Source: Fimbriosthenelais zetlandica (lineage: Eukaryota). From it: a stretch of DNA of 64,000 nt. The first letter of the stretch is position 1; every line of letters starts with the position of its first letter. Shown here in pieces: positions 14,928-59,326 of the stretch. The DNA lies in NCBI GenBank assembly GCA_977030845.1, contig OZ365116.1:18662001-18726000 (forward strand), written 5' to 3'. The translations under genes and the position numbers were made by a program. The notes beneath the pieces are model-generated. The model searched no databases, was not told the origin of the DNA, and worked only from the letters and a program-made list of their open reading frames with translations.

Positions 14928-15189
14928 TCAATATGCGAACATCATGTCGCTTGATTCTTGAGGGTATGCATTACCAGATGCCTGCTCACTGCCCAGTGTT
15001 GGTTGTTGGTTGAAGCCCACAGTAAAGGTTCCTCTGTTGGTGTCAACCTGACTGTTCTGGTACGGGTTGGGGTCGTATGGTGGCGTTTCGTACGGTACTG
15101 TATAGTAGCTGGGCTCCTCGTAGATATGATCGGTAGACATAGTGTCCACTGGATAATTACGGGCGTCCCCTTTGCCTTTTCCTTTCCTC
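14928..15189 (-). CDS. Terminal exon, cytoplasmic tail A (R-RKGKGKGDARNY...SSDMMFAY*)
   Basis: Acceptor tactcatttcattaacag|G completes AGG (Arg). 86 codons open, basic start, 9 Tyr. AATAAA on the minus strand at 14173-14178. Confidence 0.8.
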
Positions 15190-18100
15190 CTGTTAATGAA
15201 ATGAGTATATGTTAGATGAATGATTGACAGTTCTATTAGGATTGTCATAGTATCTCCATAAGACCTCTTGGTCAAGAATTAATCATTATGCTGAGCTATT
15301 ACAGGTGAATTTCACAAAGAAACATTTGAATTTGAACGTATCTCAGACAGAATTCTATTCTACAAAAAAGCAACAGGCATGCGTTAAAAACTAATATTGC
15401 CATGCAGATTTTGTCTCATTGTTTGAAATCAAAACAAGATGAACATCCTCCAGTTGCCTTTGAACTAGAAGACTTTCATCATTATAGAGGGTGCGGTCTG
15501 ATAGAGATAATGTGTATAACATCACAATGTGTTTGGCATGGCTGGGTCATGCAGGCTGGCCTGTACCTCTTGTCGCTTTGTTGGAGCTTTTTGAATGCTA
15601 CACCATGCCTTGATAGGATAACAATAGTGAGGTGAAGCCACGCTCCTGTACCATAGAGCTACAGGTATACCACCCAGCCACACCCTCACACTGTCATAGG
15701 AGATGACAAATAACTTTCTCCATCTAAATAAATCATGCGGTGTCAGATAAAAAAAAACGTTGCTAGAAATAAAGAAAATTCCATAATCTAGTGCAAGCTA
15801 AAAGTAAGACTTAGAGTAAGCAGAAAAATGCAATAATGAATCGATCACATAAAAATATTGCGTGGCAAAGCTAAGACATGTGCCTTTATTTGCTCCTGAG
15901 AGGCTTTCACATAAGTATGTGTGCATGCCCCTAAGTTACAAGTCAAAGGCAATGCTTAAGCTTATATTGTGCAAAAGGACCAAAGAAATGTGAAGGGAAT
16001 GAAAAGAGATTCAAATCAATATTTATAAATAGTAACCTTTGAAGACGCCTTTGAAGGTGGGTGCTCTATTTTTGATTTGCCTGGCCAAGGCCAATGAAGC
16101 CAGAACTTCATATCAGTTTTTGATCACATCTTTTGAGGGACTTCTTTCAGAGACATCCATGACATGAAATCTGATGTTCCCAGTTCAAAAAAGACCTAAT
16201 TTATTCAGGAAGGTTCAACATTTTTTTAGCAGTGAGACTAATTGTAACGAATTTGATCATGCAAAAAGAAAAGTTGCTTTGAGGCTCTTGCTTGATGTTG
16301 TGGTTTTTGCAATGTTGATTTCTTTCTGAACATTGCAGTGCTCGAATCTGAAATCTGATGATTTTCAGGTTTGTTGACAGAATATGGTTAAAAATTATTG
16401 AAAAGCAATATACTATACAAACTAAGGGGTGCAACAAATAGTCACATGCATCGGAATGACTTAAAAACATTTTACTGGGTTGTCTTAGATTTGGTGCGGG
16501 AGAGGTGGATGTCGTGCCCACAATGACAACAGCTGAAGACTACAGTACCATTGCCAACCATGCGACGTCAACGACATAATTCGTTTGGTCACAAACTTAC
16601 TCATCCCATGTTCGCGCACGGACATCATGAGAGACTACTATAGAGACATTTGGGGGAGGAAGTAGAGGAGGACCTGGAGCCTAATTTAGGTGGAGGTTTG
16701 AGTTGTCGATGGTTGGCAATATGTCAGAAGCTGAGAGTGTGATACTGCGGAGGGTGGTTGTGGTGAGCATGGTGGTGCTGGTAGTTATGTCTGTACGTGT
16801 GAGGCGATGGCTCAGGGATGTGATCCGCCGGAATCTCGCAGTAAACATTCTCCTCATTTCCAAATGCATCCACAGGTCCGTACTGCGCATGTGCAGCAGG
16901 GCCATAACGAGGTAGAGCATAAGGATTACCCCCCGGTGGTGGAGGGGGTATTTTGTATTTGTTTGTGGTTGTCTCATATGTATGATGGTGATGGGGGATC
17001 TTGGCTGACATTGCAGCTGCAGCCGCAGCATTTGCCCGACGTTCCCTCCGTCTTTGCCTGAAATCCCAAGTGAATTAGTAAAAGCAAGTAAAGACCAACC
17101 ACCACGATTCACACTCATCAGAAGTGGCTCCACTGCGGCAGACTAATTATTGGGGCAGAAAATTTACATATATATGGTATTTGGGAGTTAGAAATTGCAG
17201 GAATTACAAATGTCAAAGGCGAAGAAGGTTTTTTTGGCAAGGAAATCATGATGTTTACCATGAGGTGAACTGATTCATAAAGTTCAAGTTATGGGTTGGA
17301 CTGAAGACTGTCGGGATGTGTAATGTGGAGCAGAATGATAGATAGATGGGGAAGGTCCCTTAAGGCGGACTATCTATAATTTGATCACTGTTGCTTCGGT
17401 CAGAGTATCAAAGTTGCCTTTGTGTTTTAGTCTGCCTGTATGAGTGAATCAAATTGGGAGCCAATTCTGAAGTGCACTTCATTTAATATTACCGAGATAA
17501 TAGAGGTATTAACATGAGATAAAATGTGAAGAATAATCAAAGCACAGGATTAGAGAAGCACGTTTACGTTAACCAGATCCTAGGTTTACTTTAAAGAACC
17601 CAAAGCTTGACCATTGTTTTTATGATGCTGCTTTTACATGGTGTTTGATATGAGTCATGGTGAGGATCAGACCTTGTATAGATAAACATTTATCAATATT
17701 ACTGATTAGCACGGAGCTATAGAGAGGGCTAGCTATAGATATATTATAGACGGGGGATGTGTGACAGGTAAGGACTCCCTATACATGAGCTATGTTAAAA
17801 TTGCATGACAAGTGGAGTGGCTAGCTTGTGGAGACACACAAGGTTGGGAGCGGAGGTTGTGGAACTGCCCTCCAGGCTAATGGCTGAAATGACTAGAACA
17901 GCCAACAGCATAATCAAAGCTTTACTTTCATGAAAAATTCAACAGATAAAAACATCCAAATTCAAATTACGAATTTCCGTATTGAGCCAAATCAACCTCA
18001 AACGGATCTGTCAAAGTCGTTTTTGTTTTGATGGTTCTACATCGCTTTAGCATATTGTGTCAAAAGCAATATTGATTAGACAAGTCTAGGTCTGTGATGG

Positions 18101-21100
18101 CAGAAAAAAGACCTTTCTGTTCAAAGACTGCCTCTATGGGGCTTAGTTCCTCCTGAATATTGAACCATATGCTCATATTTCTTATTCACTTTCTGATTGC
18201 ACATGGCATTAAGTCTTTTGTGTTTAAGTGGCTCGTGATATTCCTTTATTGACCGGCCGCCTGTGAGCTCCAACACTCTTGTGTGAGCACTTCAAATGCC
18301 TCTTCTCTGGCTTTTACTATGGCTAACAAGCTTGGTGCAAATACTTTTGAACATACTAGAAACACTTCTTCTGCCCTACCTCCCTTTATGCTTGGTAGGG
18401 GTGGAGGAAGTTGGCAAAGGTTGCGAGTTCCTCAGCGTAATGCTAGAACAATTGTTTCTAGGTGGCAATAACAGGCTGGTATGCCTAGACCTCATGTTAT
18501 GTATAGGACTAGGTACAGACAGACAAGACTGCCTAAACTGCTGCCGCACTATAGCACTGATTGTCTCTCTGAAGATATGCCAGATGTGTCCATATCCCCA
18601 CTGGGTTTACATTTCTATTAGTAACAAATATGTTTTCTTAGGGGGAATACCAGTAAACAAGTTCTATTATGCACCGTGGAAATTCGATTTCACTATGTAC
18701 TTTTTCTACTGGAAAGGAAGTGGATTACAACCAGAGATGTCTTTCGACAAAAGAATTAAAATGATTGATTTTGTATGCAGTATGGTAATAGTTCTACATT
18801 ATGACAACATTTATGCACCTAAAGCTGACACTCACATAATAGTGTCTTCTCATACAGCGCACCTACTGAGACGACTATACAAAAAGGGTGATGGATTGGT
18901 GAATGGATTCTCTTAGGGGTAGATACATTTCTGATGAATAAATTAGCGCTGAGGAATCACCTTAAAGGCTGGCCCTCTCATTTGAGGAATGTTGTGAATT
19001 CTCTCTTACATCCAGTCATCCTCCGGGCGGGAAGCTTGATGGATGTAGCCATTGGGTGAATGACCTTAGGAGGTAAGATACTCATGGTGAATGAACAGCC
19101 ACAGGTTCCTAGCGGGGCTTAGATAGGCAGACATCCCAGCATATTGAGCACAATGCCGGGAATGGGTCAGTAAAGTGGAGAGAGAGGCAAGAAAGAGACA
19201 ATAACTATCTGTATATTGGTAGGAGAGCAGCACAGTTCCTCCTCACAGCTTGTCTCTGCTCTCCTCGACAAATCTAAGCTAAACAACCGACAACGCAATG
19301 TCATGTTTTTCTACAAAAATCGAGGTCATTAATTTGGCGAAACAGTTGATCCTGAACCAATACTAGTAACTTGATTTACACAGTCTGACTTTGTCCTTAA
19401 TTCTACGGTTTAGCACTGATTCTCAGACAGCCTGTGGCAATTGGTATGGGGAGGCTGAGCCCACTGTTGCTGCAATGATTCTTGTCTGCTTGGTTAAATG
19501 TTAGGGTCAGTCAGAGTGCAGGTACAGGTGCTGTCACAGCAGTTAGACAAGCACCAAGCCCTGGTCTACACACATTCTTTTTATCTGAACTCTTTACCCT
19601 TTTACTTGTTGGTGATTATCTGTGGAGGGTTGAGATACCATCAGGACTCTCCATCCTGTTATATCATCTCTCATACCTTATCCAGTCTTGAGATAGAAAT
19701 CATCCAGGACTGAGGGCAAGCCGAGTGAGATGGCGCAGGATGGCAGTAGGGCTAACACATAGATCACTGAGGATGACCATCTATCCTCATTGCTTGATCA
19801 CTTAACGAATATAAATCCCTCAGACCTCGTGGGACCCGGTCCCATTTACTGAATGTCCCTGATAGCTAGATATAAAAGAGGCAATATATGGAAACGAGGA
19901 ATTACAGTCCATCTCCCCTCGGCAAATTCCCTATTTCCTGATACCTGATGCTAACCACAAACAGCTATCTGTTTTATCGATAATTTAACATTTATTCCTT
20001 CCATGAAGCATTATATATTACGTCTATATGGCTTAGTTTGTAGTAGTGGTTCCATGAACATGTCCTAGCTATATACACTGAATCTTAGTAGGTGGGTGCC
20101 CCCTTTTAGTAGAACCTATCCACCATTTCTTCAGTAGATTATTAATGGTAATTGTAAGGGGAATAGTAATGTATGTTCCTGTATTGAATACTGAATGTTC
20201 CGCACCTTCTGCCTTGAGAATGTATAGAGGTAATCCTCAGCAATAATGAACTTTGCCCTACAATGGCTTATGATATACGACTACTGTAAGCATTCACACC
20301 TCCAGCTCTATATGAATGAGCTCCGGTTTAGAAAGGATCTACATAAAATCTCCCCCCTACACTAAAAGTAATATTTCCCAATCCTGGTAGGTGAAGGCCT
20401 GTTCGATGCAAGTTCTCTGCAGGCATTCTGTTGTTGCTAGGCACTATCCATAAAGAATTTCTAAATAAGAGCCTGGTATTTCGTAAGCACATCAGCAATG
20501 TATGAATGACTATATATCCGTCTCCCTCCAGCGTCTCTCACATATAGTCTTTCCCCTGGGAGTGTACGTGATATCTCTTCTTGAATATTTAAATAATTCA
20601 AGCAGTTAATCCGCCTAAACGCCTTGGATATTGTAGCAGCACTTTGATAAGCCAGACAATGACTTAGATTACTGCCTGTCTAGATCTCCCCAATGCAAAG
20701 ATCATTTATTTCTTTGTTCAAATCGTGGTTCCCCTTTCCTCTTTGGCCTTTCATAGAAATCAGAAAATAGACTGAATATTTGGTCCGGACACATGTAAAA
20801 AAAAAAATAGAACCGAATAGTCGGAGGAAGCTTTTCCCACTTCGGGGCTAAAGCTTATCCAGGAGATCTATCGCTGAGCATATTGTGGGAGTATGAAACA
20901 GAACAGAGGGGAATCTCGGGGGAAATCACTGCACATCGCGCACCTTCTCCCTCTCTAACAGGATTGTGGCAGCTTCAACAGCACGATCGTAAACTAGTTG
21001 CCTATCAAGCCCGATGCAATTGAAGTTTGCCAGCAGAACTGCTGAGAAGTTTGTTCACAAACTTCTTGGTGGCGTTTAACCGCTCAACAAATAGTCAGCC

Positions 21101-24100
21101 ACTCTTCTGAACTCTTAGTATTCTACTCGGCATTCTGCTCAGCATTCTGTCTTAAATGCAGAGTTGTAATATAAATAGGTAATATTTAAATCATTATTGA
21201 TATCATTTTGCCCAAAGGTTGTTCACTGCAGTATCCTGTTCAGTTCTCAACTGTCCGCACCAACCTGTAGTATGATATTGGGGTAGTAGTATATGCAAAA
21301 GGTGCATAGCCTCAGGCAGAGTCAATCATGCAAAGCAGGGGAGTTGGCAATTTATAAATTGCTTTTCCAGACGCATGACAACGAGGGGCTACGTTGTAGT
21401 CTTGTGTTTAAGAATCAAGATCATTCTGACAGAAAAACACTATTAAGATTACAAAAAATCATCATTCAAAAGCGTTATGTCGTCCATTAAGTTCTTTTAG
21501 CCTGATCGACAGACATTCAAAAGTTTTTGCCAACATTCAGATCTCCCCATTCACCAGGAATCTTCACCATAACCTCCCATCAGTTCCACCAAAAACCTTA
21601 GCCATCAAGAGATGTATTTCCAGCCTGATTAAAATTGTGCAAAATCAGCGCTTTCTTCCAATCCACCCTCCTTCCTACTTGGATCCATCTTTTTCTATAG
21701 GATCAAGAGAAACAGAATTAATATGTTGGATGTTAAGTCCATGGGTAAGACAGTTGGATCTCTTTTTGACACCGCTGTCTGTGCCTTTTCTCAATTAGCT
21801 GACTGCAAAACCTGCCCTGCTCCTGAAGGAGAGATAGCATTAAGGAGTGCTAATGGCTTTCAGTGACTGATATCCGAGGTAGATAATGAGATATATTAAT
21901 TCTTCTTTTTGCTCTAAGCTAAGAACATTTCCCACTTATAGGACTTGGGATTATGCCACGTGCAACTACCCGCTCTTGGGAGATACTAACAGCGGGCATG
22001 TACATCTTGGAAAAGATAATGTGATTATTTGATCTTATTTGTAGAAATTGATTTTGACATCTCACTTTTTCTCTGTATCTTCAGGTTTGATATATTTTGA
22101 GTTCAGTATGAATCCACATGCCGAATCTACTGAGCAATGAGCCCAGTATTGGTTATGAATAATATCCTCACATAATGAGCCTGTGATATTATAAGGTAGA
22201 ATGAATGCTGGGATGATGGTGATAATGACTCATGTAATTATGGAAATATTCAAGATGAAGCGTTAGTTATGCCCCCAGGAATAGACAGAGGCCATCAGAA
22301 ACGGCCCATTCATTCATCAACCAGATCTGTTTCACTAGCAGCCATAAGATCTCTTTGATCTTTATTCGTGCTGTCACATTACTGTGTATGTCATGTCTCT
22401 TATCTCCCCTCTCTATCTCTCAAACTCTCTCCTTCTGGACTTTGTTATAATCTGTCTGTTGATTGTCAAGCTATGCAGGAGGCTTTTATATTAAGTTAAC
22501 CCTGGCTAATGTATAATGATAGATGAGTATGAATCGGGGAAGCTCGTGTCATTTTGTCCGTGTTTTATGACTATGTTAGGTCAGGGTATTTGTATGTGGT
22601 CTAAATACATCCTTTAATGTCCTTCAGTGCCACCAGTAAGGCCCTGGGAGTCATATAAGAGTAGGGAAAACATCCCAGGCTTTCTGCCTGCTATCTTCCC
22701 AGTGCCTTTCATACATGTATACATGAATGCTTCTGTGATGTAAACCAGTTATGAAACAACATGCAGAAAGCATTGCTTTTTGAGCTGTTAACGCACATTC
22801 AGGTTTCACAATCCATTACCCATGCTCCTTTTTCAAAGTTCCAAATCTCCAAGTCGTTACGTTACAACAGTATCAAACACATATCGGTCCTTACTGAGCC
22901 TAAAGCAGGTATATTATTCCCGACCAGACGGCTCATTCTATCAGTATTCTTGTTGTCTTTTTCCGAATACTGCTCGGACCTATATCTGGAATGTAAATAC
23001 CTGCCATGGTAGGCTCACAAAAAAGCCCCTGTGGAATACTCACAGAATAATAAAATGCTTAGCAGTGTATGATAGTGTTTCTATGTCCTATATACTCAGG
23101 GGCATTCTGCTCGTGGAAACCACACTAGTGCTTCACTGAAAGCATTTTTTTCCTTTTCCATTCTTGTGCTCCGCCTTTGTCCTATGACATTTTCCACATA
23201 CTTCCTTCCCTCCTTATCATTGTGCCACCATTTGACTTAATGCTTATCTCATCAAAGTGCTGTTTTTTACGCGCTTCGCCTTGAAAGGAAAAACCTCAAA
23301 GAGCCTGAAGATAGTTTTGAGCCATCAGGTTGATCTAATTATGATCAGAGGGAGGAGGTGGCTTGGGAGAAATGTGTGTGGCCTGCGGACACAAGCTTAA
23401 GTGGTGTGAGATCTAGTCAGGTTATATTGGGCCCGAGCCAAGGGACTGGAAGAAGAGGCGGAAAAGACATCAGGTGTGTCTGTGTGTGTTTGGATTGGAT
23501 GGAGGGAGGGAGTTGCTCTTAGAGGAACTCATTTTCTGAACAGAATTAGAACAAGCCCATTCAGTCCCCTTGAGCTTCAAAAAGTTCACAAATTGTTGAT
23601 AAATATTTTATGCTTGCGTCCTCTAAATAAAAGTTAGAGGTCCTAAAACATGGTTTTAGACTATTGATCTATTGTTTGTAGTGCATGTATTATTGAAGCC
23701 ATTTGCCTCAGCTCACATGTATGTTACATGAAAGAATGAAACATTACACTCATAAGCCTGCCTATGCTGCCTTCAGCACACACATGTACATGCCTTCCCA
23801 CTCTTCTCTCTGCATCAAAATGCTGCATGTGCAGCCTGAATGGAGACGCTGGCATCATAGAAGCAGTTCACAATGAAAGAAACCATTCCAGCTTTTTCCG
23901 CTTGCACATCACCACATAAGAAAGGATGCGTTTGTTTTTTGCAGGAAGAGCGCACGTTGTGCTATCCCGATGCCTGTAAAATACACATCTGCGCTCTTGT
24001 CCTGGTGTCCCACCAAGCCTTAATGAAAAAAGAAATGATGTATCTCTATCTGCAAGCATAATGGTAGTTTTGTATGGAAGACTGATGCTGTGCTGATACA

Positions 24101-27100
24101 GTTATAGAGAGTGTTAGAGGGTGGATGTAGAAAGGAAGTGGGTAGAGGAATGGGAGGGTGTATTGGAGGTCCACCACTTTATTACAAATCCCGGGCGCAA
24201 ACAGAGAAACATAATTATGGCGAGGTATTATCTATTGCCATTCGGATCCAAAAAGATTTATTGCCCCAGTTCTCCATAGTGCCAGGGAAAATCTCATTAT
24301 CCCATGCAAATTCATGTTTGCATATTCACCTTCTGTCTGTAATTAGAAACACTGTTGTTTTAACGGTCAAAATATTCTGAGGACATTTGAAAGAATGATA
24401 TTTCATTCCACCGTTGCTCATCGAAGTTCTTAAGTTATTTAAACACTGTGTTTTTCCGAGAAAAGCTTTGCTTTTTCTCCTCCCATTGGGGCTTGGGAAA
24501 TTGCAACATCACTCCCTCTGCCACTCACAAAATAGTTTGGAAATTAATTAATTAAAAGAGTTTTATTGTGAAGTGTTAAATATGAACTTTAAATTGAAGG
24601 AGGATGGAGGCTGAATTGTCTCAAGTTTTGGATCTGTTCCAACTCGGTGCTCTCCGCATGAGTGAACCGCACTTCACTTCCTTTATCCAGGCACGTTTCT
24701 TGGTCGATGAGGACCAATCGGAACACTTGTCACAAAGTTTATGTAACACGTGACTGGCATTGTCCAATTAGACGAGCCCTTACAACATGGTGGAAGGTGT
24801 CATTTTGATGGAGTGCTCCACTCTGAATCCACCCTCCTGTGCCATGAGGCCCTACTTAAGCATATTTTGAGAGTTGATTTGAATCCTTTGTTAAAGCTTT
24901 CCTTGTCTCACTTTCCAATCCAAGGGGTTCAGATTTAGAGTTTGAATCCAATAGTCTACAGAATAATGAAGTCCTCCATGGAAGACCTTGAAGACAATGT
25001 TAAGTGCTTATTTCACGCCTCCAACGAAAAGTAGACGGTACTACGAGCCGATTGCCTTATTACAGCTAAAGGAATATATCCTCAATGTGCGAAACATCCA
25101 CATGTCCACCATTAAGGCCCGAATAATTATGAAGAATTGCTTGGATACAGTGATTCAAAGTGTGAATCAATACTTGTAGTTAACATAGTATAGGCAATGA
25201 CATGCCATTTTCCTATTTCATCAGTGTGGAGGACTGTAAAGTTTCTATACGTTGTGTTGTTTTGAGAGACGTGGGTGGACACTTTGTAGAATGTTTAATA
25301 ACAGGAGGTCTGTAGGTCTGGGTGGCCTACCTGTGTGTTAAGAATGGTAATATTTATCAGCCATGACACCACAGGGGCAGGATAAGAGCTGTGTGGACAA
25401 AGAAGCACTCCAAGCCGGGCCCCTCTTCACTTAATTGGTGTCAAGCTGGCTGACATTTTCATTTCACCACCTGAGCTGGCAAAACTTCCTGATAGTGAGT
25501 GGCATTATAGGCGAGGTAGCTATTTAAGTGTGAATAGGCAATGAAGTATTTTGGAGTAATGAAGGACTAAACAGCCTAGCTGCAAAGATTCTCCACTATC
25601 TTTGCTAGCTGTAGTGAGTACTGTACTTATTGGAATCTACCACTCCTCTAGGTCTTCCCTTCTAAGCTTCTAAGTATGAGACAGGAAAGACTGTGAGGAA
25701 ATATATTGATACCTTCTTAAAATATGTTTATAAAAGGTCATGATGGTCTGTATGGGGCTGGGATAGTCCTGTTTTCCTCTACTATTATCAAAGTATCGAT
25801 TTCCAGTCCATACATCTTATGTCGTTCTTTGTATTGGCTCCCATTGTGTGGTTTTGACTTTTTTCCATATTCTTTGACAAATGAACCGCTATGAGTTGAT
25901 ACTATTGTTTTTCTCCTAGCAAGGATAGAACAATACAAACTGTTTTCCCAATGAAAAAGAAATAGTCCATCAATCATTTCATGTCTTTTCTCAGATGAAG
26001 CGAGTGAAAGGCTCTCAGTAAATTAACACCTTCGATTAGGATAATGTGTGGAGGGGAGGATTTCTAGTTGAAGTCAAAGATTCATAAAAACATACCATTG
26101 ACTGGGGGCTTGAGGGCCTTGGCAAGAGACCTTGGAGATTGAACAAAGATCATGTGTCTTACACAAAGAATGGCACAGCTTCTTTGATGGTAAGAAAGTA
26201 TCATTAGAGCAGAATACACGTTTCTGGCGGCCTTGTCTATTTTTCATATTCTAATCCAATAATCTCCCTGGAAGAAAAACGCTTCGCTAAAATACTGCTT
26301 TAGTCTAAATGTATGTCCAAAACACAATAATATATCCGTACGGTGGTTGAATGGCCGAGATCTAGGACTGTTTTATGCCTGTCTGCTGCATCCTAATGAC
26401 TTACATATTAATTATATCAGGTAACAGTTCCACCTCTTCACCCAGTGAAGGCCTTGATTTCCAGCTGTAGCTGAAAACATCAGATTGTGAAGGTCCTTTG
26501 GCTTATTGTTCTCCGTGAAATGAATGTTATAGCTTTGACCCTCACCTCAATAACACCAGGGAACATAAATGAGAAATGAAAAGGCAGCAGCTACACTCTA
26601 GTCTATGGCTGGCAAGTGTTAGAATTGCATTCTGCTTTGAGCTATTACTCAGTGGCTCCCGCCGTCTACGTTATAACTTGAAGAGCTGCTGTGAGTAGTT
26701 TGATTTATTGCTCAGCCACCTCTGTTCATTAGGAACTGCCTCCTCATTGCCTCAATATAGGCTGTAAAATAATTTAAGCTTGCAGGAATAGTGAAGAAAA
26801 ACACCAGAAAGGCTTATCCAGTGCAAAGTGGTTAATCGTGTGGCGTTAATGACGCCTGATATAATAGAAAGATGATTAATTTTTGGCATAATGAATTTTA
26901 TGGATTTACGGTGACACTAGAGGCTTCTAGTCGCCCCTGATTTTTTTCAAATTAAAACGTGCTGTGGAAACGTAATTTCATTTCGGGCAGAGGATAGCTT
27001 TGCGTATTGGATACAAGGTGTAAAGGATCCCAAGCCTGAATTAATCTGGGGCAGTTGGGATTCCTCACTATGATCTATGTTTCTACCATTGATTGAGACC

Positions 27101-33100: not shown

Positions 33101-36100
33101 GGTATTACATGCGTTCATTCTAGTCTGACGGTTTCAAATGTTTTTGTAATGTGAATCTCGCGAAATTAATCATATCGGGTGACTGGCAGGTTCAGTGTCT
33201 CCAGTGGCTTTGTGAAGAGCTGCAAATCATTGGGAAATGAATCACCAAGTTTAGTTGTAAATGAAGTGCATATCTGTTATTGCCTTACATGATTGGAACT
33301 CAAATAAGTCATTGAAGTGTTTGGAGAGTCATATAGACCTTCAAATCACTGCCCTTCTGTGTAAATGTAAGGTGTTGTTGTCACTCAGCAATCTAATTGT
33401 TGCCTGATATTTTTCGTTGCCTCATAATAACTTTTCCCGTGCTTTTAAGGTGATGAAAGGAACGAGTCCTAATCATAAATATCATGCAAGAAATTACAGA
33501 TTTATATTCTCGTTTTACCTGGAATCAATGAGCAGCAGCTTTGTTATTATGAATCTGTTTGGCATTAACTTCTTGACAGCCCTGATTCCGTTCCCTTGTG
33601 ACTCATTTTTGCTATTGTCAAAGGTCCTGATGCCCATGGCCCCTAATCTCTTATGGCTGCCTTTCTCTCTTATGAGGTTTTTGGGAATGCAGGCTGACAG
33701 CAGTGAAGAAAGCTAAGACAAAAGAATGTTGTTCCATCTCTGGGGTCATCATAAAAGCCTGGCCTTGTGCCCGCCTCCCTGCTCCAAGCTTTGAAGTCAG
33801 AATTCAGTTGTCTGAACGTTCCAATACCTTTTTCCTCCCACGTTTTCAAATCTATTTTAATTAAATGGTCCAACATTCAGAGGCGACTACAATGGTTAGC
33901 TTTCGCTAGACGTTCCTTCCTCTAGTTATCCTACTTGGCAAAATGAGCATGGGCATATTTTAAGGCGCAGCCCATTTGTCAAGCAAATTTAGCAAAATAA
34001 ATCATTTTGCTTTCGTTAAGGACAGTTCAGTTCCAGAGCAACAGCTAAATCAATGCAATTTTAATTAGAACTGCAAGTAAAAGAAGTTAAGCAAAATGCT
34101 TGTCATATGAGGACTGCTAAAATGACTTATAGTTCCGGGCTTGGAAGCACAGCTATATATTTTATACTTGTGTAGATGTGACCGACCCCGGTTCACATAT
34201 GACTTCATCACATACAATTATCTTCATAAGACGTACTTGAAATGACGGGAGAGGAAGATTTCACCGGCTGAGAACACCATCTCAAGTGGATGTTTCTCTA
34301 CATACTGGATGAGCTCGGGTAGTCAGGTGGACACTCACTGTGTTATTAGAAAGGATTTAACTGTCAGTCCTGTCTCAGGGGGCTGCAGGCCCACACTGAT
34401 GTATGTTAGTCAAGGGCTTTAATCCTTCTCTCGTTTCAAGAAGACACGTTAACACTAATGTCAACCTCTCAACCTCTGAGCTGGCCAGAGTGCATTAAGT
34501 GGATGCCTTCCTTCACAGAGCAAATGGATGCTGGGTGCATTAAACAGTCACAACATAACATTAATCGCTAAGCCTTTCCTGTTTATGATGGGATGTTATG
34601 TCATACTTTCAATAACATAATTTAATAACAAAATGTTCTTATTTAATCTAGAAACGTCGCCCACTCATTGACAAAGTTTTGCAAGATAAGCTTTTTTTGG
34701 TCATTCCTCCAGTTTACTGCCATATGGAGAATGAGATCCGGCCATATTGCATATATCTGTTTCTGTTACTGGACATAAGGAATATCTATGAGGCACAGGG
34801 GAAGTAAAAAAAGACTTCATGAAGTCCCGCTTTGCTTTTTCTGTTGGCCCCAGCCGGCCCTTGGAAAAAAACACATCTGGTCGAGATTGAGAGCCGTCAG
34901 ATTGATGGCATATCAGATCAAACGTCTGTGGCATATGACCACCTTCTGAATGGATGTGGATCGGCTGGCTGGCAACTCCAGCCCGGTCCACCAATCTTAT
35001 CATGTGAGATTATGGAAGTCAATGAATTGTGTTGCTGGGTTCTGGGCTACAGATAGTTACACTGTTGGGTGACTATCCTTCACCAAACTGACTGCCCTGG
35101 CGCATGCATGCTCCTACTAAAACTTCCTGTCTTGGCATTCATGCCCATTTATAAATCTCTGCTCATATTCAGTTTAAGGTCATTTTTCATGGCCTTCTGC
35201 CCACTCCTTCTTACCTCCTGTCTCACAGATCTAGTACTTCATCCCCTGCCCTCCGTCTTCTCTTGTCCAAATTACCTTTTTTACCCACTCGCTTACCTTT
35301 ACAATTCATCTATCACTCACCCACTCCATCATCTACTCACTTAGCTATGAGTCACTTCCTCCTAACCATATTACCTACCAGCATCACTCACTCATATGGT
35401 TCTTCACTCATCTGCTCTACCTCACCCACACATTGTATGGAGGGTCCATTTCTCCTTGTTCACTCCTTGCCACTTGCAGCTAAACCCTGTCACCTCACCC
35501 TGCTTTGTAAATCTATTTTCCGTCACCTGCCTCCCACCTTATAACGTGATAGTCAGTGGCCGGCTGTGATACACGGGGCTGGGTCCGTGAATTTAATATT
35601 TCACCAGCTTGCTTTATGTGGTATTGAAATGGTTAGGGCCGTCCAGAGATGAGGCCCTGTGAGTAGATAATAGCAGTTGGAAGCTTGACCCACAGGCAGC
35701 ACCTGGGGACCTAACTCTGTCTAACAGACTGCTAGTCTTCATGGGAGCTGACAGGGCTGCTTCTATGGGATTATTAGTGGATGCATGCAATAGCTGCAGT
35801 ATGAGTGTATGATTTAGATCTATCCTGACCTTCTGCAATGCAATGCCTGTGCTCCTCTCAACTGCCCCCCGCCCTCAGTCGTGCCATTTACTGCTTTGAA
35901 GCTTTATCCATTTGACATGATTCGCATATCACTCTGTAACATCAGTAGACTCTACAGATGGTTTAATTACCAATCTAACCAGAGCAAGCGTTGACCATCT
36001 AATTTCATCGCTTGTCATTTTTGGAACCTTTCTCAACTTAGATGTTCCAGTCTAGAGAGCGAGGATTGTGTCACCTATGAGGGGTTGAAGGTCTGGGTTC

Positions 36101-39100
36101 ATAAGGCCAGGACCTCAATAACATGGGTCAGTGGGTCTAGCTTGGTCCGTTCCTGGTCATAATGAAACGTTTCAATATTAATTCTCCAGCTAGTGCTTCC
36201 CCGCACTTTATAGGGTGACTACATCTAAGCTTCCCCATGGGACGCAAAACCTCATAAAAAAATCCGCCTGCCTTGTGAATGGCCTGGGGTGATAATTCAT
36301 AGCTGTTTCTTCTCCCAGCCCCTGGACGGTTAATAAGTCCATAAAAGAGAATTTTCCTGAATAATAGAGGAATACCAGGTCTAAATAAAGCCTGGCATGA
36401 AACAAACGATCTTCATTAGCAAATGCTGTGTATTAGTTGCAGTGAAGTGAAGTTGACACTCGCTCGTCCTTCACCACGTGATGAATGCTCTCACTCATCA
36501 GCTCTAATTAAATCTGAATTTCAAAAAACCCCACCAATAAAAATAACCTGTGCAAACATGGCTTCAATTTGTTTGAGCTGAGGACTTCTGGTTGCTCATT
36601 CCATTCGTTCCAGCCCAGCAGAGATTCACCATGCTTGAATGTTTAATTCCTCTTGGAATGATTTATTTAAGTGCTATCACATTTCATGGCTTGGAAAGCA
36701 CACAATTTCTCTTTTTATCATGATCTCAGTGAAAACAATCTCCCCTTTATCAAGGCCGTTAATGCTAGACTGATGTATCATACAAAGATAAAATATCGCT
36801 ACTATTTACAAAAATAGTAAAAACCGCATCTGTGTCCCACATTATTTCTTGTTCATATTGACGCCATTGGTAAATGTTTTAATTAGCCAGTGAGGGATGA
36901 AGCCTATATAAGGGCAACAGCCGAGTTACTTGCTCGTCTGTTGCCATAGGGTAAATCATTCACAAAAGGCCCACATACACCGCTTTTACCAGCTTTATAG
37001 AAGCCTTCCATTAAATGCCTGTGCTGTATTTCTCTCTTCATCAAAGCGATTAAGGAGGTCAGCTGTACATGCCAGCAACTGGCCTCCAGTTAATCTGTGA
37101 CAAGGAAGACTAGCGTGATCTGGTGACGGTTTAGAAGCCATGTGAAGGACACGTTTCCCCCATTTGCTGGGTCTCTGTGGACAGCTTCTGAAGTCTATGA
37201 GAAGAGATTAGAGAAGTGAAACAGACAAAGCTGGGTTACCTCCCCAACAAAGGCGGGGAGGCTAGCGGGTAGGGGAAGACGGGAACAGGGCTATACGGCC
37301 AGAGAGATCTTAGCCTGCGAATCATTGAAAGAGAAAAGAAAAGGTATGGAGCTTGAAATTCGATTAACGTCCAAAGTATTTGAAGCTTGCTGACAAAGCT
37401 GCCTCCCGGAGACCACCTCCATGCATACTAACTTGAAGGTGTGGACGTCTTTACCCGGATTGTGGGATACCAGGAAAGCATTTTAAATATCACTGAGAGA
37501 GAAAAAGAAATGGCAGCAGTTTGGTCGCTGCTCATATTCTCAGGCTTTGTAATGTAATATCTTTACTGTCTTTGTTTGCTATGAAACCCTGAGTAAATAT
37601 CACAGTGCTCGCAACAGATTGATGGTACGTGTATTAGTGTTGTGCTTTAGATGATCGTATTATATTATTCAGTATTGATGTGATGGTATTGGATGCACGT
37701 TCATCGTATATATGCATAAGCATTGCAATAACTGATTCATTTACTTGTCTTCTGAGCAGTGAAAGAAACCACTTGTTTAGCATTGATAATACAATCAATG
37801 AATAGGATGAAATCCTCTTAGCCAAGGAACCATCGGACATTCAAAACTTAAAGCAGCTGTGAGACAAAAATCAGATAGTGTTTCATTGCATTTCTGTGAG
37901 TGAAATATTGGATTAGTGACAGAGACTAAGATGATTTACATGAAAAGTTTAATCACGCACATCTCATCTCGTGTTTCCGACCATCCCTTCTTCTGTAGCC
38001 TTTGAGGTAGAAGGATATTAGAAAGGCAACCTTTGAGGTCTCGGCCTCCAAAGCATTGACTTATTCAAATCAAAATCACTCCTTTTCGAAAATGAAATCT
38101 TCAAGAGCAGCCTATGCTTTTGTTTGGAGCAGCCAATAATCCAATTTTTAAGCTTAGATACTAAAGTAATCTTGGTAGCAATTGCTGTTCGGAACTGAAC
38201 TGGTAAATCTTTAAAATTTTGATAACTGCCTCTGTTGGATGGGATCCGTTGCCTTTGGCAGTGAGCGAATCATTTGCCCCAAACTAATGGTTTCAGTTCC
38301 TTTAATCAAAATAGATGGCCATGTTTTCTAGAATGTGGTCATGCTCAACCAAATGATTGCTCAGTAATGGCCCGCAGTTTAAAACCGGAATTTGGGTCAG
38401 AAAATGAAAAAAACACAGCAGAGGAGAAGGGAATAATTGGGGGTCTCGATTGGGATTGTTAACGGCCTCTGTGCCCGAGGGAAAGAGCATTTAGTGTTCT
38501 GTCGCAATTCCCTAATCACTTAGATTTTCATTAACCTTTAAATGTTTTGCATTGTGGATTAATTTTTGATTCCCTCCTTAATAATCTAAAATTCCCCTTT
38601 TTCCAGAGTTTCTCATGGCATAATCCATTGATTAGATAGGAAAGATCATGACAAGAATCTCCCTTTTCATTGCTGTGTGTTGTTTGCTGGGAAATACTGA
38701 TCCCACTGGGTGCTGAGACGATGATGACAAATGGAACACAAGACCCAACTTCCTTGGGATCCAGATTGGAACCAGTCGGATGGTGGGACAGAATGATTGC
38801 AAAATGAATACTGAATTCAAAGAAAATTGTTTATGACGCAGAAGCCATTGGGTGGAAAACCCTTCTTGACACAAGCTCGCACAAATGGCAATTACTAGTG
38901 TATCTGGCTGCGGTATATTGTTTTTTGTCTTTAGCCGGGTATTTGATGATGTGTGGCTGTCTGCATTTGTGATGCAGAAGCTGGGATAGTGATGTCAGGT
39001 GAGACGTATAGTATGGCCACTGGGGGGCGCTGTCCCTGCACCCCGACCAATGGAGGGCGATATATAATGCATTATAACGAGGAAGACTAGGCGCCCTCAC

Positions 39101-42100
39101 CACACAGCCTCACTACAAGCTCATCAAATATGATAACAAGGCTTGTCAGGCGACGTGACAGTCTGGTACGGGTGTAAAACACTGTCACATGACTACCAAC
39201 TCAGTCACATGACCGGTCACATGGGTTGGTGAATGTCCCCAAAATGGCATCTTAAGAACATGTGGTGCTTTGTCTCTGTTATAAATTCAGGTTTTACCAA
39301 AGGGCAGCCTGCAATCACAGGGTGGTTTAGAAGATCACATCCTCTTGTAACCTTTCTTGCTCTGGTCAGATAGTTATGGCTTTGGCTCATACTAGTTGTG
39401 ATCTTGGGCCGTTTATATCAACCTATTATACTGCCTGGAATAGACCATATTTCCTCATAGCTCCCTTCTCCCTCTACCTCAATTCGTAGGGCCTTTTGCA
39501 TGGAGCAGGGGACTAAAGCCCACTAAGGGAGGTTATTATAGTGGGGAGATGGATGACACCAAGACAAATGCTCGTCCACTGAATGAGATCTGGAGGTGTC
39601 CAGGTAGTGTATATGCTCAGGCATATTTGGATGTAAAACGGGCCCAACAACAGTCAAACATGATGGATCCATGGCAGTCTACCATGTCAATGTGATATAT
39701 ACCCGGCTACTGTGCTATGGCCACAAGCCACAAGGGAGTAAGAGGCACAGTAGACAGGGAAAAATATAAAATACATGGGGACACCTCGAGGACTGTCAAA
39801 AAGGGACAAGGACATGGCTGCTGGTGGCTTTTACAGGAGGCTGAAGTTGCAGGCGCCTCATCTGAAAGGGCTTATCAGAAGCGGATGCCCAATGTGGGCG
39901 CCCAATGGGCATGGCTGAGAAAGTGACGCGGGCAATGATGAATTTCCCCAGAACCAGCACAGATATATGATAGGTGCTCAGATGGATGAAGACTAATGTA
40001 GAAACGGAGCCTAACCGTTTGTGACAAATATAGATAGAAAGATTACAGATCATTGGCTCTCTAAAGAGAAAGGAAGTGTTGGGGGGAGAGCCCGATGAAA
40101 GGTGGCACTGCGCCAGTCTCTGAGGCAGTTGGGAAATCTTGACAGCGGAAAGAATTGGGAGAAAATGGTGAGGACAAAGCATGAGGGAAACAAATGAGTC
40201 GGTGTGCATGCCAGGCTGAAGGATAGGTTGGAGGCGAGGAATGAATAGTGACGGCAATGAGCTATAGATCTGTGTGACTTCTTTTCCTGCTCAGTTGGTG
40301 GGAATATTTCCAACTTGATCCACATGGCATCTGATCAGCCCTTTTACTGATAAATACCATCTGCCTGCCAATCTCTTCCCTTGTTTTTAACTTCACAAGA
40401 ACCAGGATTATTTTTTGTATTTGCAGGCATGGTGGAACAGATGGTGTTGAAAAAAAATCATCCCAAAACAATCAGTTTTTAGGGAAATGGCACTTCATCG
40501 ATGGTGGCGATATTTTAAAAATATGTATTGTGGCAGAGTCATTTTAGGGCCAAATGGTATTCTTGTTAGCTCGGGTTTTCACACTATTGATTTTTGGGTG
40601 ACATATGTGCTCTGCTAACCCGGAAGCAGTTTGTCAAAAGCCGATCTCCCTAATTTGTCCCTTTCACCACATCTGCTCGTTTCAAACATGTCAGTGCTGA
40701 CTAAACCAATACATAAGTCATGACTAGAAGACTTTTAAGAATTGCTTTCTTGCTCGGCTCTTTTTCCAAGATAGAAAAGTGAACATTCATCATATCGTTA
40801 AAAAGTTCCAGTCTAAAAGACATAAACTTGACTCTAAAGATCGTCCAACAGAGCAGAATCATGAGGAATATCCATCAAAACCCATATAACGCTGAGTTAA
40901 CTGTCTAGAGAAAGAAACATTCTAACTGGTGTTCAAGGAGTTGTATATAACAATGTATAATATGGCTGGCCGTTTTGCCAGAAGCAGAGTTGTGCCACCC
41001 ACATGTGAGGTGGCACGCTAAATGCTGTCTGCTTAGTTGTATTGAACATGCATGTTGTAGGGCGAGTATTGGGAATGAGCTCTAACTTGAGATGTGGCAT
41101 ACTGGTATCTGGATGACAGGTCTTATGCCTGGAATGATTGCTCCATCAGAGATTGGCGATTCCACGCCACTAAACCATCCATGTAACAGTATTAATCCTG
41201 ATTTATGGTGTGACACGCGGCTGACCCCACCATGAATACAGGCTGAGCCGCTAACACCCATTCACCCTGCTGACAAGTTAACTTTCTCATGAACCATTCT
41301 CTCACCACTTCCTCATTCCATGTCAATAACATCTTCATGTCTCGTTTATCAGGCTGACCCATAGGCTGAGGCAGTCTCCTACTATGTTTGAGCATTAAAT
41401 CTTTCACATCCAAGTCACAAAGAAACAAATCTCTAAGATAAAATTCGCTAAGAGACACATCGGAAACGCATCTAATGATAAAAGCTCTCCCTTGGCCATG
41501 GCCATTATTGTCTCCCTCTTCCTTCAATCTGAATTCATTTTATATTAAATGCTATAAAAATGGCTTGGTTATTTGATAACGTGTGTCAAGCTAAGTAGCT
41601 TGCCAAGAGTGTATTTATGTCCTGCCAGGAGCTTCGTTGCTCCTGGAAATGTATTGATGTCGGATGTGGAGTTTTTGGAGGCTTGCTAAGTATTTTTTGA
41701 GAGAAGAGGAGCTAGGTTTTGTTATGAGTAACCTGAGTAAGAGGCCAGTACTTGATAGCCAATTAGCCGTGATAATTTACATCACATTTCCGGCCTAAAC
41801 CTTCACTGCTTTGTTCTTGACAGCTTTATTGGAGCGGGTTACTTGATATGCAGTAGTTGGTAACATATTTCAATCCATGGATGTTTGCCTGTCGGAATAT
41901 TTTGTGTCGTATTGTCATGCTGTGCTATAATTAAATGCAGCAATGATGAGATATTGTATGCAAATGATATTATGTGCTCATTGCAACTAGGAATGCCTTG
42001 AGGCACGATGAATCCTCCTATTTCACCATGACTCATAAAATTCCTAAAGGAACCGTTTTGTTAAACATTTTAAAGGATATAGCAATTACTAGACCACTCC

Positions 42101-45100
42101 CCACTTAGAAGAAAGAAGAAGGAATTGAGATTATTATTGATAAGTGAAGCACGTGCTGCTTTCCCGGGTGATAATGATAGGAATATTGCTTTTCATACCT
42201 GGCACATGCTAGAGCTGTGATGATGACGATGACAATTATCATGAGAAGTCCACCTGCCGACGCTGCTATAATGATCTCTGAAAAAAACAAGACAGTAGAC
42301 ACTTAGATCTTACTAAGCAATCTATAAAGCTTTACATATATATAAATATATAACACCTAACGATGTAGTGCTGGCTATAACTGGCCATGGTGCTGGATAT
42401 AGAGGACAAATGGAGGTAATAGACACACCTAACTGTAGACTGATGGGAGGTAAAGAGACACACAATGGTCATATCTATTAGTCAATAATCTACTTCTCAC
42501 TGTGGCAATGGCTTTCACCATATCAAACTAAAAGCCCTCCATATATAATGTAAATAGTCCCTAGACAAATCATGTTGGACTATCATTTATACTTTAGAGA
42601 TTTCACCAAATGTGGAGCCTCCATTTGTCCACGATTCTACTCAAGATAATATAACCAGATACACAATGTCCTGTCGACTATTTTACATGTATTATTAATG
42701 AACCGATTTAAAGATTGGTAAAATGTGTCCCTGGTTTTAAACGTTGATTTGTGGTATGGGTGAAAGGGGATGACAATAACTCATCCCTTACCCTTCTCTA
42801 CCCCCTAAGCAGTCGTAATCCCCTAATGCAGTATGAGTAGCATACACTGAGAGCCCCATTCCCCAGGCAACCCTTTAATCCTGCATCAAATGTAGTATGA
42901 AAAGAAATAGACCGCCCCTGCCAGGGGATTAACAGACTTCTTCCCATGTTGGCAATGGCTGGAATTAGATGCTACCTTTCCTGATTCATTTACGATATCC
43001 CATGAGAGACAAAAAGTCTGGCTCCAATAAAGGGATTGTAGACGCAGTACGGGGATGGATGTATTAGTCTTACAGGGATAGAGAAATTTACTGCTCACTC
43101 ATCTGCTCTGAGGTTACCTTTTTCCTCCCTCGTATGACGTTTCATTTCAGTTATGAAGCGGAACTTGTCATACCATTAATCATGGATCAGAAACAACCAC
43201 TTTTTTAAAAGCAAGCAATTTATATGATGTTTCTCAGATGTCAAGATGTCACAGGCCCACCAGTGTTTTAATTCCAGTCTACATTCAAAATTAAATGGGA
43301 ATCCATGTGGAAAAGAACTGCACACGCAGAACAAGTGATTTAAATTGTAAATCTCAATTCCAGATTTACTCCAGGAGATTAAGTTTTCTCCCTATATCTA
43401 ATCAATTTGAATTCAATCTCATTGACGTCCTTGAATCCACCTCCAATCTAGTCATTTACATTTAGTCTGTGGTTGTATCTGATGAAATCATTTATCAAAC
43501 ACTATGATCAAATGTAATGTTAGACGTAAGGCCCTGTGTAAATCCAGTTTAATGTGGTCGTGCCTGGCTCATTGCAAGGCCTTGTTTTGCTCTTTTCCCG
43601 TTGACTTTTTTTATATACAAAATTAATGACTTGGCTGTGATTTCACTGAAATTTGACACACCCGTTACTCCTCAATTTTTCAGGCCTCAGTTCTTTTCCA
43701 TGGAAGAGTGCAAAGCATTGCACAAGTCCTTAGGTAGTTTGTATTTTGAAACCCTTGGGAGACAATCCTTGCAGTAAGTGCAGAGGAAACATGAGTTTTT
43801 CCATGCCGCATCCATGCTGATTGGATGATGGATTCACCTGTCGCTTGACTTAATGATTTTTGTCACATTTCTCACTCTCCTCCCTTTAACACACCCAGCA
43901 ACAAATCCCAGCAGCCACTTTTTTGAAGAGTGCTGACTAATCAGCGGCATGGTACAAATCGTTGGCTGAAGGTCTTAAATCTCGGGAACAGGATGAAGAT
44001 AGTAGAATTAGATCTGATAATTCTGGGACCGGCCATATATATATTATGATTATTAGTCAGAAACTGAGTGCAGTAATATATCATCTACAATGCTGAGGTA
44101 GAGATCTAAGATTAACCGATGCCTCAATATTCTTACAATCTAATCTCTTCACCATTTTGTAATGGCTGAGCTTCTCTAGGATTTCTTCGGATTTAAAAGT
44201 CTGTAGAAAAATTCCAAGGTCACTTCCTCTTCACTAATTTGAACCAACCTACATTGATTGGATTGCACCTTCAATTACTCCCACACCACGACTTAAAATT
44301 CTGTTGCCTTGCATTAAGTCGCTCGAACGAGCAATTCCTTCATGCCATTGTAACTCTGAAAGCCAATGGGAAACCTGTAACATATTGATTATAGTCCCAT
44401 TTGGTCGACCAGGGACCTCCTCAGACCTTCTGACCAACGGGGCCATATTAAACACTGGGCTTAAGGGTAAGACTGATCATCTGTTGGGACTTATTAGAGC
44501 TAGCATCAAATTACCAGGCTTTACCCGGTATATAGGCAGCATATTAACTGGATCTCACCCAATATACATGCCGCTACTCCCCCCTCCATGCTTTATTCAT
44601 GCCATGCATGCCCAATTATCACGAGACATATTTCTATATTCCCCCGTCCCCATCCTTTATAGCCATTTTCTTTTCAAACTAATGATGCTCTAAAATACCT
44701 CCTGTCCTCGGGAAATGTAGGTTTCATTTCAATGTGGAAAATAATGCGCAGTCGGAGTCTGACTTCATGAATGCCCCTCATGAATGCATATAGGGGGATA
44801 TCGCTCCATTTGCCACTCCGTCCATCAATTACACTGCCACGCTGATTAGGGGAAAAGGCTTAGAATTGTCATCCTTCGCTTGGAAACTGCTAACCTACTT
44901 CCATCACCATTTCCTTCACTCATTCCTCCCAACATCCCTCCTATCAATCCACATAGTGGGACTTGTTGGGCGGGAGGGAGGACTTAAGAATTCCCAGAGA
45001 GTTCTTGATTAACATAAGGGTTTACCCTCTCAGAGAGTAAAGGAGGAAAACCTGAGCCCCCCGCAGGGTTATTTAGCTGCCCCTCTCCTACTCTCCTATC

Positions 45101-59314: not shown

Positions 59315-59326
59315 CTGTGACGTTTC
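59315..59326 (-). CDS. Candidate 12-nt microexon (GAAACGTCACAG) upstream of the signal-peptide exon; could instead be 5' UTR
   Basis: Long polypyrimidine acceptor (ctttttctctctccacaactcag) and donor CAG|gtatgg. In phase 2 it adds K-R-H-S ahead of LFIMLLLPFILPLA. Confidence 0.45.

What the first reader, a model, noticed from the sequence alone, without database searches (positions are those of the whole stretch)
14928..42277. One receptor ectodomain with an array of interchangeable cytoplasmic-tail exons (mutually exclusive last exons)
Seen: the TM exon ends in a split AG- codon. Two unrelated terminal exons, 25 and 27 kb away, both start with G to give Arg, continue RKGKGKG or QRRRERR, carry 9 Tyr each, end in their own stop and have a downstream AATAAA. 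Because tail B has a stop and tail A starts with a juxtamembrane basic cluster, they are alternatives rather than consecutive exons. Up to six weaker phase-2 candidates, a cassette exon and an intron read-through tail lie in or beyond the same intron. Known: alternative last exons and clustered mutually exclusive exons exist (Dscam varies mainly its ectodomain; paired immune receptors vary signalling through separate genes). Inference: here recognition is constant and signalling output is switched by splicing/polyadenylation. I do not recognise this gene family, and novelty cannot be confirmed without a search.
Basis: partly seen in the sequence, partly recalled or inferred. Interest (0 to 1): 0.85.

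Follow-up and report, generated by a model that had tools for sequence, protein, structure and literature searches.

The report
Receptor gene with two candidate tails
A lectin-type membrane receptor gene of an invertebrate (probably a worm) is followed by two different, intact tyrosine-rich tail exons that both fit its membrane-spanning exon, so it may make two signalling versions by an ordinary kind of alternative splicing, but no RNA data could be found to show that both are used.

Summary
The sequence facts are confirmed. On the minus strand there is one gene: a SUEL-lectin exon, two exons I read by eye as CUB-like, a Thr/Ser stalk, and a TM exon (42277-42199) ending in a split AG| codon. 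Tail B (17057-16724) and tail A (15189-14928) each start with G, giving Arg and then a basic cluster. Each has 9 Tyr, its own stop and downstream poly(A) signals.

They are the two clear outliers among all ORFs of the window. Nothing else on that strand between the TM exon and the tails looks like a TM exon or a protein domain. No usable donor inside B could join it to A, so as the sequence stands they are alternatives.

The wider claim of an array is not supported. The other phase-2 candidates score no better than ORFs in the wrong phases or on the other strand.

Use of both tails is unproven. No sequencing runs were listed and no homologue of either tail was found.

My estimates are about 0.5 for a proximal/distal pair of alternative last exons, and about 0.33 that only one is used and the other is a relic of a lost tandem paralogue. 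Alternative last exons that swap receptor tails are well known (for example leptin receptor, integrins, CD46), so this would be a new member of a known kind. Earlier scan notes place a cluster of the same family next to this window.

The parts
53318..53617 (-). SUEL (rhamnose/galactose-binding) lectin exon. It has a phase-1 start and a phase-1 end.
   Evidence: Pfam PF02140 matches at E 1.5e-6 with 28.9 bits, below the gathering score of 31.4, over the full 1-80 profile. The splice sites were read. It is 56% identical to a metagenome exon fragment, P0001/L001, which has the same exon borders and phase.
52637..52803 (-). CUB-like domain, first half (SLPEDVAWTKSICSG...CMCTIKVPPNVEVQ).
   Evidence: The acceptor, donor and phase were read. 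Pfam does not call CUB on this half alone. The CUB name comes from my reading by eye and from earlier notes on the family, and was not confirmed here.
47046..47253 (-). CUB-like domain, second half (IQPRKFSLTKYGTWCGQ...NISVW).
   Evidence: Splice sites and phases fit the neighbouring exons. There is no Pfam hit.
46329..46874 (-). Thr/Ser/Pro-rich mucin-like stalk exon of 182 codons, ending in phase 1 (AAT G|gtaagt).
   Evidence: Its phase-1 end joins the TM exon start (G+AG = Glu). No homologue was found for its non-repetitive part.
42199..42277 (-). Transmembrane exon (E-IIIAASAGGLLMIIVIVIITALACA) ending in the split codon AG|. Its donor is CAG|GTATGA.
   Evidence: The donor score is similar to the gene's other donors. 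The acceptor is at the 99.8th percentile of AG sites. It is the only TM-like segment ending at a phase-2 GT upstream of the tails.
42105..42198 (-). Intron read-through frame after the TM exon (R-YEKQYSYHYHPGKQHVLHLSIIISIPSSFF-stop). AATAAA lies at 41830. This is a possible short-tail product if the intron is retained or polyadenylated.
   Evidence: Read, with the poly(A) signal. It is too short to tell from chance, and its use is not tested.
16724..17057 (-). Tail B, the proximal candidate last coding exon. It reads Arg + QRRRERR, poly-Ala, His-rich and PPPPP stretches, with 9 Tyr (including YKIP, YALP, YCEI, YHTL), then TGA.
   Evidence: Tail-likeness score 12.7, against a control maximum of 1.0. 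G+C is 0.53. The acceptor is at the 93.8th percentile, with a tactaat branch-point-like site. There is no good internal phase-2 donor.
16200..16205 (-). AATAAA after tail B, followed by a T-rich run. A second AATAAA lies at 15890.
14928..15189 (-). Tail A, the distal candidate last coding exon. It reads Arg + RKGKGKG, with 9 Tyr (YEEP, YTVP, YETP, YQN, and a C-terminal FAY), then TGA.
   Evidence: Tail-likeness score 11.5. G+C is 0.50 against 0.33 upstream. The acceptor is at the 98.8th percentile, with a tctaac branch-point-like site.
14173..14178 (-). AATAAA after tail A. An ATTAAA lies at 14378.

Best explanation
This is one type I membrane protein gene on the minus strand. It has a SUEL lectin domain, a CUB-like domain, a mucin-like stalk and a TM helix, and it ends in two tandem alternative last exons.

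The TM exon donor at 42199 would be spliced to one of two acceptors. The first is the weaker, proximal acceptor of tail B (17057), with cleavage at B's own poly(A) site near 16.2 kb. The second applies when B's acceptor and poly(A) site are passed over: the stronger distal acceptor of tail A (15189), with a poly(A) site near 14.2-14.4 kb.

The two products would share the ectodomain and TM helix but carry unrelated, probably disordered, tyrosine-rich tails. Tail A has YxxP x3, YxN and YEEP. Tail B is His/Pro/Ala-rich with YxxP x2, YxxI and YxxL. Each tail would therefore recruit a different set of phosphotyrosine-binding partners.

Shown: the anatomy, the phases, and the absence of any other compatible upstream exon. 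Inferred: that both junctions are made, and what the motifs bind.
For: - Both tails are exactly phase-compatible with the TM exon and start with a basic juxtamembrane cluster.
- They are the two outliers among all ORFs and among all phase-2 acceptor-ORFs, against wrong-phase and opposite-strand controls.
- Their G+C is exon-like.
- Each has its own stop and poly(A) signals.
- There is no plausible phase-2 donor within B. All four phase-2 GTs score below 0, while the four real donors scored at their correct positions score 4-5.
- No other TM-like segment sits next to a phase-2 GT between 42190 and 15189.
- No Pfam domain appears in any minus-strand ORF of 60 aa or more in the intron or the flanks.
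- No paralogous copy of any exon occurs in the window.
- A weak proximal acceptor with a strong distal one is the usual layout for a regulated choice of last exon.
- Both ORFs are intact although they share no similarity and no DNA repeat. They are therefore not recent copies of each other. By my rough estimate, an unselected 260-330-nt frame would usually be broken after a few per cent of neutral divergence.
- There are no assembly gaps in the window.
Against: - There is no transcript evidence at all. No sequencing run was listed for the tails, so read laying could not be used.
- There is no evidence of conservation. No homologue of either tail was found among fragment-sized proteins or metagenome contigs. 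Full-length annotated relatives could not be searched with the tails, because of the length filter.
- The codon-usage test was underpowered and did not pick out the claimed frames.
- The 25-kb intron is much longer than the gene's other introns.
Confidence: 0.5

Rival explanations
1. Only one tail is used. The other is an orphaned last exon, left behind when the upstream exons of a neighbouring tandem paralogue were deleted. It would be not yet decayed, or only spliced in at noise level.
For: If the intron after the TM exon is at a conserved phase in the family, any paralogue's tail exon would fit any TM exon and would start with a basic cluster. That would explain two unrelated but compatible tails. 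No RNA or conservation evidence supports dual use. B has strong-looking poly(A) signals 0.5-0.8 kb downstream, which could end most transcripts before A.
Against: Both frames are fully intact, with exon-like G+C and good acceptors. No remains of a second ectodomain or TM exon were detected. An old orphan should have picked up stops or frameshifts, so the orphaning would have to be recent.
Confidence: 0.33
2. One or both tails belong to another transcription unit. That could be an unrecognised small gene, or an upstream cluster member splicing in from beyond the window. Alternatively, the contig is misjoined somewhere between 17 and 42 kb.
For: The 25-kb gap is unusually large for this gene. 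The first, signal-peptide exon of the gene was not found, so the gene model is incomplete at its 5' end. The assembly cannot be checked without reads.
Against: There are no N runs in the window and the base composition is even across it. There is no alternative TM-like exon with a phase-2 donor. No domain-bearing ORF lies on that strand in the intron or flanks. The basic cluster at the start of each tail argues that each directly follows a TM helix.
Confidence: 0.1
3. There is a true multi-tail array: three or more tails, counting the weaker phase-2 ORFs and the intron read-through.
For: A read-through frame with 4 Tyr and an AATAAA 370 nt downstream exists. One further ORF (acceptor 25915, RKTIVSTHSGSF..., 4 Tyr) has a basic start.
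Against: The third-best phase-2 candidate scores 0.6, against 12.7 and 11.5 for B and A. Control ORFs in the wrong phases and on the other strand reach 1.0. The others are hydrophobic, Cys-rich junk typical of random ORFs.
Confidence: 0.05

Closest known systems
Alternative last exons (splicing-coupled alternative polyadenylation) that swap receptor cytoplasmic tails. Examples from my own knowledge: leptin receptor isoforms, prolactin receptor long/short forms, CD46 CYT-1/CYT-2, integrin alpha6A/B and beta1A/D, CEACAM1-L/S. For alternative last exons in general, see PMC6411841 and PMC8055025 (listed; only titles and abstract openings were seen).
   Same: One set of ectodomain and TM exons. Two terminal exons, each with its own acceptor, stop and poly(A) signal. 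No splice path between them. The tails are unrelated, with different docking motifs.
   Different: Use of both exons is not shown here. The gene family is uncharacterised. The last intron is unusually long at 25-27 kb.
Dscam1-type clusters of mutually exclusive exons
   Same: Only the general idea of choosing one exon from several.
   Different: Dscam clusters consist of many homologous internal exons of similar length, each with both splice sites. Here there are two unrelated terminal exons, and no further candidate stands above chance.
CUB-domain type I membrane proteins with Tyr-rich scaffold tails (DCBLD1/2/ESDN with YxxP repeats that bind CRK/CRKL; CDCP1). From my own knowledge.
   Same: A single-pass protein with a lectin/CUB-type ectodomain and a disordered tail carrying several YxxP motifs.
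   Different: No sequence homology was tested or found. The ectodomain make-up differs (SUEL lectin and a mucin stalk), and CUB identity was not confirmed here.
The SUEL-CUB(-sushi) receptor family of this genome and its tandem cluster (earlier scan notes s1-214044, s1-207658, s1-183025)
   Same: The order SUEL lectin, CUB-like domain, TM, Tyr-rich tail, and a position next to the cluster.
   Different: This member has a long mucin stalk, no sushi-like exon was seen, and it has two candidate tails. No member of the cluster could be compared directly from this window.

Membership tests
Gene with alternative last exons | A shared upstream donor that is phase-compatible with each terminal exon | tested here: met
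   The TM exon ends AG|. Both tails start with G and read on in frame.
Gene with alternative last exons | Each terminal exon has its own acceptor, stop codon and poly(A) signal | tested here: met
   The acceptors are at the 93.8th and 98.8th percentile of 1929 AG sites. The stops are at 16726-16724 and 14930-14928. AATAAA/ATTAAA signals lie downstream of each.
Gene with alternative last exons | No splice path that makes the two exons consecutive | tested here: met
   The four phase-2 GTs inside B score -0.5 to -6, against 4-5 for the four real donors scored at their correct positions. B also ends in a stop.
Gene with alternative last exons | Transcripts that join the shared donor to each terminal exon | not testable with these tools
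   No sequencing run was listed, and no transcript-derived or annotated protein was found.
Dscam-type mutually exclusive exon array | Three or more homologous tandem exon variants | tested here: not met
   A and B are unrelated, there are no DNA repeats, and further candidates are at chance level.
SUEL-CUB single-pass receptor family | SUEL lectin domain | tested here: met
   PF02140 matches at E 1.5e-6 over the full-length profile, though at 28.9 bits it is below the gathering score of 31.4. The closest relative, P0001, is 56% identical.
SUEL-CUB single-pass receptor family | CUB domain | tested here: inconclusive
   The two half-domain exons give no Pfam CUB hit when scanned separately.
SUEL-CUB single-pass receptor family | A single TM helix followed by a Tyr-rich tail | tested here: met
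   A 25-residue hydrophobic exon with mean hydropathy 3.0. Both tails have 9 Tyr.
Paired activating/inhibitory immune receptors (ITIM/ITAM logic) | A canonical ITIM (S/I/V/LxYxxI/V/L) or ITAM (YxxL/I x6-8 YxxL/I) in the tails | tested here: not met
   I read the two tail sequences. No Tyr has the ITIM -2 residue together with a +3 I/V/L, and there is no ITAM spacing.

The most novel reading that the evidence does not exclude
A member of an old tandem cluster of SUEL-CUB surface receptors has captured the last exon of a lost neighbouring gene. It now couples one sugar-binding ectodomain to two unrelated phosphotyrosine docking tails. The choice would be made by competition between a weak proximal and a strong distal last exon, possibly with a third, very short read-through tail. 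That would be a route by which tandem receptor families turn gene loss into signalling diversity.
Probability: 0.4. Interest if true: 0.4.

Novelty: new member of a known kind. Interest (0 to 1): 0.3.

Why it matters
If both tails are used, one recognition module would feed two different intracellular docking platforms. That gives a simple way to study what this uncharacterised lophotrochozoan receptor family signals through, and how tandem gene clusters gain isoform diversity by keeping orphaned exons. The principle itself, alternative last exons that swap receptor tails, is well established in other animals. The value is therefore mainly for annotating and understanding this family, not as a new mechanism.

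Tried and rejected
1. RNA evidence. The look-up of sequencing runs on 14700-17300 (RNA) and on tail A (any kind) listed no runs, so read laying could not be used.

2. Homologues of the tails.
- The search for homologous proteins gave nothing for B or A.
- Metagenome scans gave nothing for either.
- The non-repetitive part of the stalk was used to try to catch transcript-derived ORFs, and gave nothing.
- These protein searches only see proteins 0.55-1.75 times the query length.

3. The single representative-library job went on the SUEL exon, in the hope of recovering full-length family members. It returned 10 hits. The best is a 140-aa metagenome fragment at 56% identity, on a 721-bp contig. 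It says nothing about tails.

4. The codon-usage likelihood trained on 429 codons of the gene was underpowered. Both tails score above the 99th percentile of the intron null in two of their three frames, including the claimed one. That is a composition effect, and the claimed frames are not singled out.

5. I searched for a second gene or relic exons in the 25-kb intron.
- tblastn of every exon against the window found only self hits.
- Pfam on 41 + 37 minus-strand ORFs, and on 10 long ORFs of both strands, found nothing.
- A hydropathy and donor scan found nothing.

6. The search for a signal-peptide exon gave no convincing candidate in the window.

7. Rejected readings: serial B-to-A splicing; homology between A and B; ITIM/ITAM logic (motif reading).

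8. The search of earlier findings by sequence came back blank for both tails. The operators state that such a blank means nothing.
Full report
**What is there**

The window has no N runs and an even composition of about 0.38-0.44 G+C. On the minus strand a coherent gene can be read, with every splice phase fitting.

| Part | Coordinates | Notes |
|---|---|---|
| SUEL-lectin exon | 53617-53318 | Pfam PF02140, E 1.5e-6, full-length match, 28.9 bits, below the gathering score of 31.4 |
| CUB-like, first half | 52803-52637 | Pfam does not call CUB when this half is scanned alone |
| CUB-like, second half | 47253-47046 | Pfam does not call CUB when this half is scanned alone |
| Thr/Ser/Pro-rich stalk | 46874-46329 | 182 codons, ends in phase 1 |
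| TM exon | 42277-42199 | E-IIIAASAGGLLMIIVIVIITALACA, ends AG\|gtatga |

The first, signal-peptide exon was not found in the window.

**The two tails**

- Tail B starts after tttcag| at 17057. G completes Arg, followed by QRRRERRANAAAAAAMSAKIPHHHHTYE... It has 110 codons, 9 Tyr, and TGA at 16726-16724.
- Tail A starts after ttaacag| at 15189. It gives Arg, then RKGKGKGDARNYPVD... It has 86 codons, 9 Tyr, and TGA at 14930-14928.
- Poly(A) signals follow each tail: AATAAA at 16205 (with a T-rich run after it) and at 15890 for B; ATTAAA at 14378 and AATAAA at 14178 for A.

**Are they more than chance?**

Yes, for these two.
- Among 91 stop-to-stop ORFs of 80 aa or more in six frames, they rank first and second for many Tyr with few C/W/F/L/I residues. 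They have 9 Tyr with 5-6 such residues, against a median of 3 Tyr with 22.
- I scored every acceptor-preceded ORF of 40 aa or more between the TM exon and 14 kb for Tyr content, lack of hydrophobic residues and a basic start. B scores 12.7 and A 11.5. The next phase-2 candidate (acceptor 25915) scores 0.6. Controls in the two wrong phases and on the opposite strand reach 1.0.
- G+C is 0.53 for B and 0.50 for A, above their flanks, like the other exons.
- On a simple score the acceptors lie at the 93.8th (B) and 98.8th (A) percentile of 1929 AG sites. The gene's other acceptors range from 93.9 to 99.8.
- A codon-usage likelihood trained on the gene's 429 codons was too weak to single out the frames.

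**Do they belong to this gene, and are they alternatives?**

I looked for any other source of an upstream exon.
- tblastn of each exon against the window finds only itself.
- None of the 41 minus-strand ORFs of 60 aa or more in the 25-kb intron has a Pfam hit. The same holds for 37 such ORFs in the flanks, and for 10 long ORFs on either strand.
- A scan for hydrophobic 19-residue segments ending within a few residues of any phase-2 GT finds only the known TM exon.
- Inside tail B, the four phase-2 GTs score -0.5 to -6 on a donor matrix. The four real donors scored at their correct positions score 4-5. Joining B to A in series is therefore unlikely, and B carries a stop anyway.
- A and B share no protein similarity, and there is no DNA repeat around them.

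Structurally this is the common layout of a proximal, weaker last exon and a distal, stronger one.

**What could not be shown**

No sequencing run was listed for the tails, so no junction or 3'-end evidence could be obtained.

No homologue of either tail turned up among proteins of similar length or in metagenome contigs. The stalk gave nothing either. The length filter of these searches means that full-length annotated relatives were not tested with the tails.

The one unfiltered search went on the SUEL exon and found only 10 relatives. The best is a 140-aa metagenome fragment at 56% identity, with the same exon borders and phase, on a 721-bp contig.

**Context from earlier notes (unchecked here)**

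The genome is called a probable annelid (s1-203909). A tandem row of eight to nine SUEL-CUB paralogues lies just before this window and is said to be shared with a brachiopod (s1-214044). This supplies the main rival reading. In a tandem family with a conserved phase after the TM exon, deleting the front of one gene would leave its tail exon right behind its neighbour. That exon would be phase-compatible and would start with a basic cluster.

**Weighing the readings**

Both frames are intact although they are unrelated to each other. By a rough estimate of my own, a 260-330-nt frame without selection would usually be broken after a few per cent of neutral divergence. A relic therefore has to be recent. 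That favours selection on both tails, and hence use of both behind the only available TM exon.

| Reading | Probability |
|---|---|
| A real pair of alternative last exons | about 0.5 |
| Only one tail used, the other a relic | about 0.33 |
| Another transcription unit or a misassembly | about 0.1 |
| A larger array | about 0.05 |

**Likely function**

This rests on motif reading and general knowledge, and none of it is tested.
- Tail A carries YEEP, YTVP and YETP (YxxP, the type bound by Crk/Nck/Abl SH2 domains) and YQN (YxN, the Grb2 type).
- Tail B is rich in His, Pro and Ala, with a PPPPP run, YKIP and YALP (YxxP), YCEI and YHTL.
- Neither tail has a canonical ITIM or ITAM.

The two isoforms would present the same ectodomain but different docking sites.

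**Comparison with what is known**

Alternative last exons are widespread, as the titles and abstract openings of PMC6411841 and PMC8055025 indicate. Receptor tails swapped in this way are classic: leptin and prolactin receptors, CD46, integrins and CEACAM1 (my own knowledge). The Dscam comparison does not hold, because these are two unrelated terminal exons rather than a family of internal exon variants.

**Verdict**

The 'array' is not supported. Use of both tails is unproven. If it is true, this is a new member of a known kind, with modest interest.

Noticed in passing
window 42105-42198 (-): Reading the TM exon on into its intron gives a 31-codon frame with 4 Tyr in its first 9 residues (RYEKQYSYHYHPGK...). 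It ends at TAA, and an AATAAA lies at 41830. This may be a short-tail isoform made by intronic polyadenylation, or it may be chance.
   Followed up: partly
L001 1-721 (ENA metagenome ERZ23495071 scaffold_575901): A G+C-rich metagenome contig carries a SUEL exon 56% identical to the one in the window. It has the same acceptor position and the same phase-1 donor (CCA G|gtgagt against CCA C|gtaagt). So a relative of this gene, from an unidentified animal, is present in that sample. After the exon comes a tandem repeat with a unit of about 60 bp.
   Followed up: partly
window 14931-15278 and 16684-17142: Several frames are open across each tail exon: three of six for A and four of six for B. The cause is the C/A-rich, stop-poor composition of the sense strand (G-C skew +0.185 over 16-18 kb). 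ORF length alone is therefore no evidence here.
   Followed up: yes
window 17058-42198: The last intron is 25 kb long, against 0.5-5.4 kb for the gene's other introns. It holds no N run, and none of its minus-strand ORFs of 60 aa or more (nor the few long plus-strand ORFs scanned) has a Pfam domain. Why it is so long is unexplained. Plus-strand ORFs of this stretch were only partly scanned.
   Followed up: partly
window 53618-64000 (-): No convincing signal-peptide exon was found for the gene. The only candidate, with its donor at 63551, is weak. The 5' end may lie beyond the window or may have been missed.
   Followed up: partly
window 25741-25915 (-): A 58-codon phase-2 ORF follows a pyrimidine-rich TAG acceptor (RKTIVSTHSGSFVKEYGKKSKPHNGSQYKERHKMY..., 4 Tyr, basic). 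It is the best of the 'weaker candidates', but it scores within the range of the control ORFs.
   Followed up: yes
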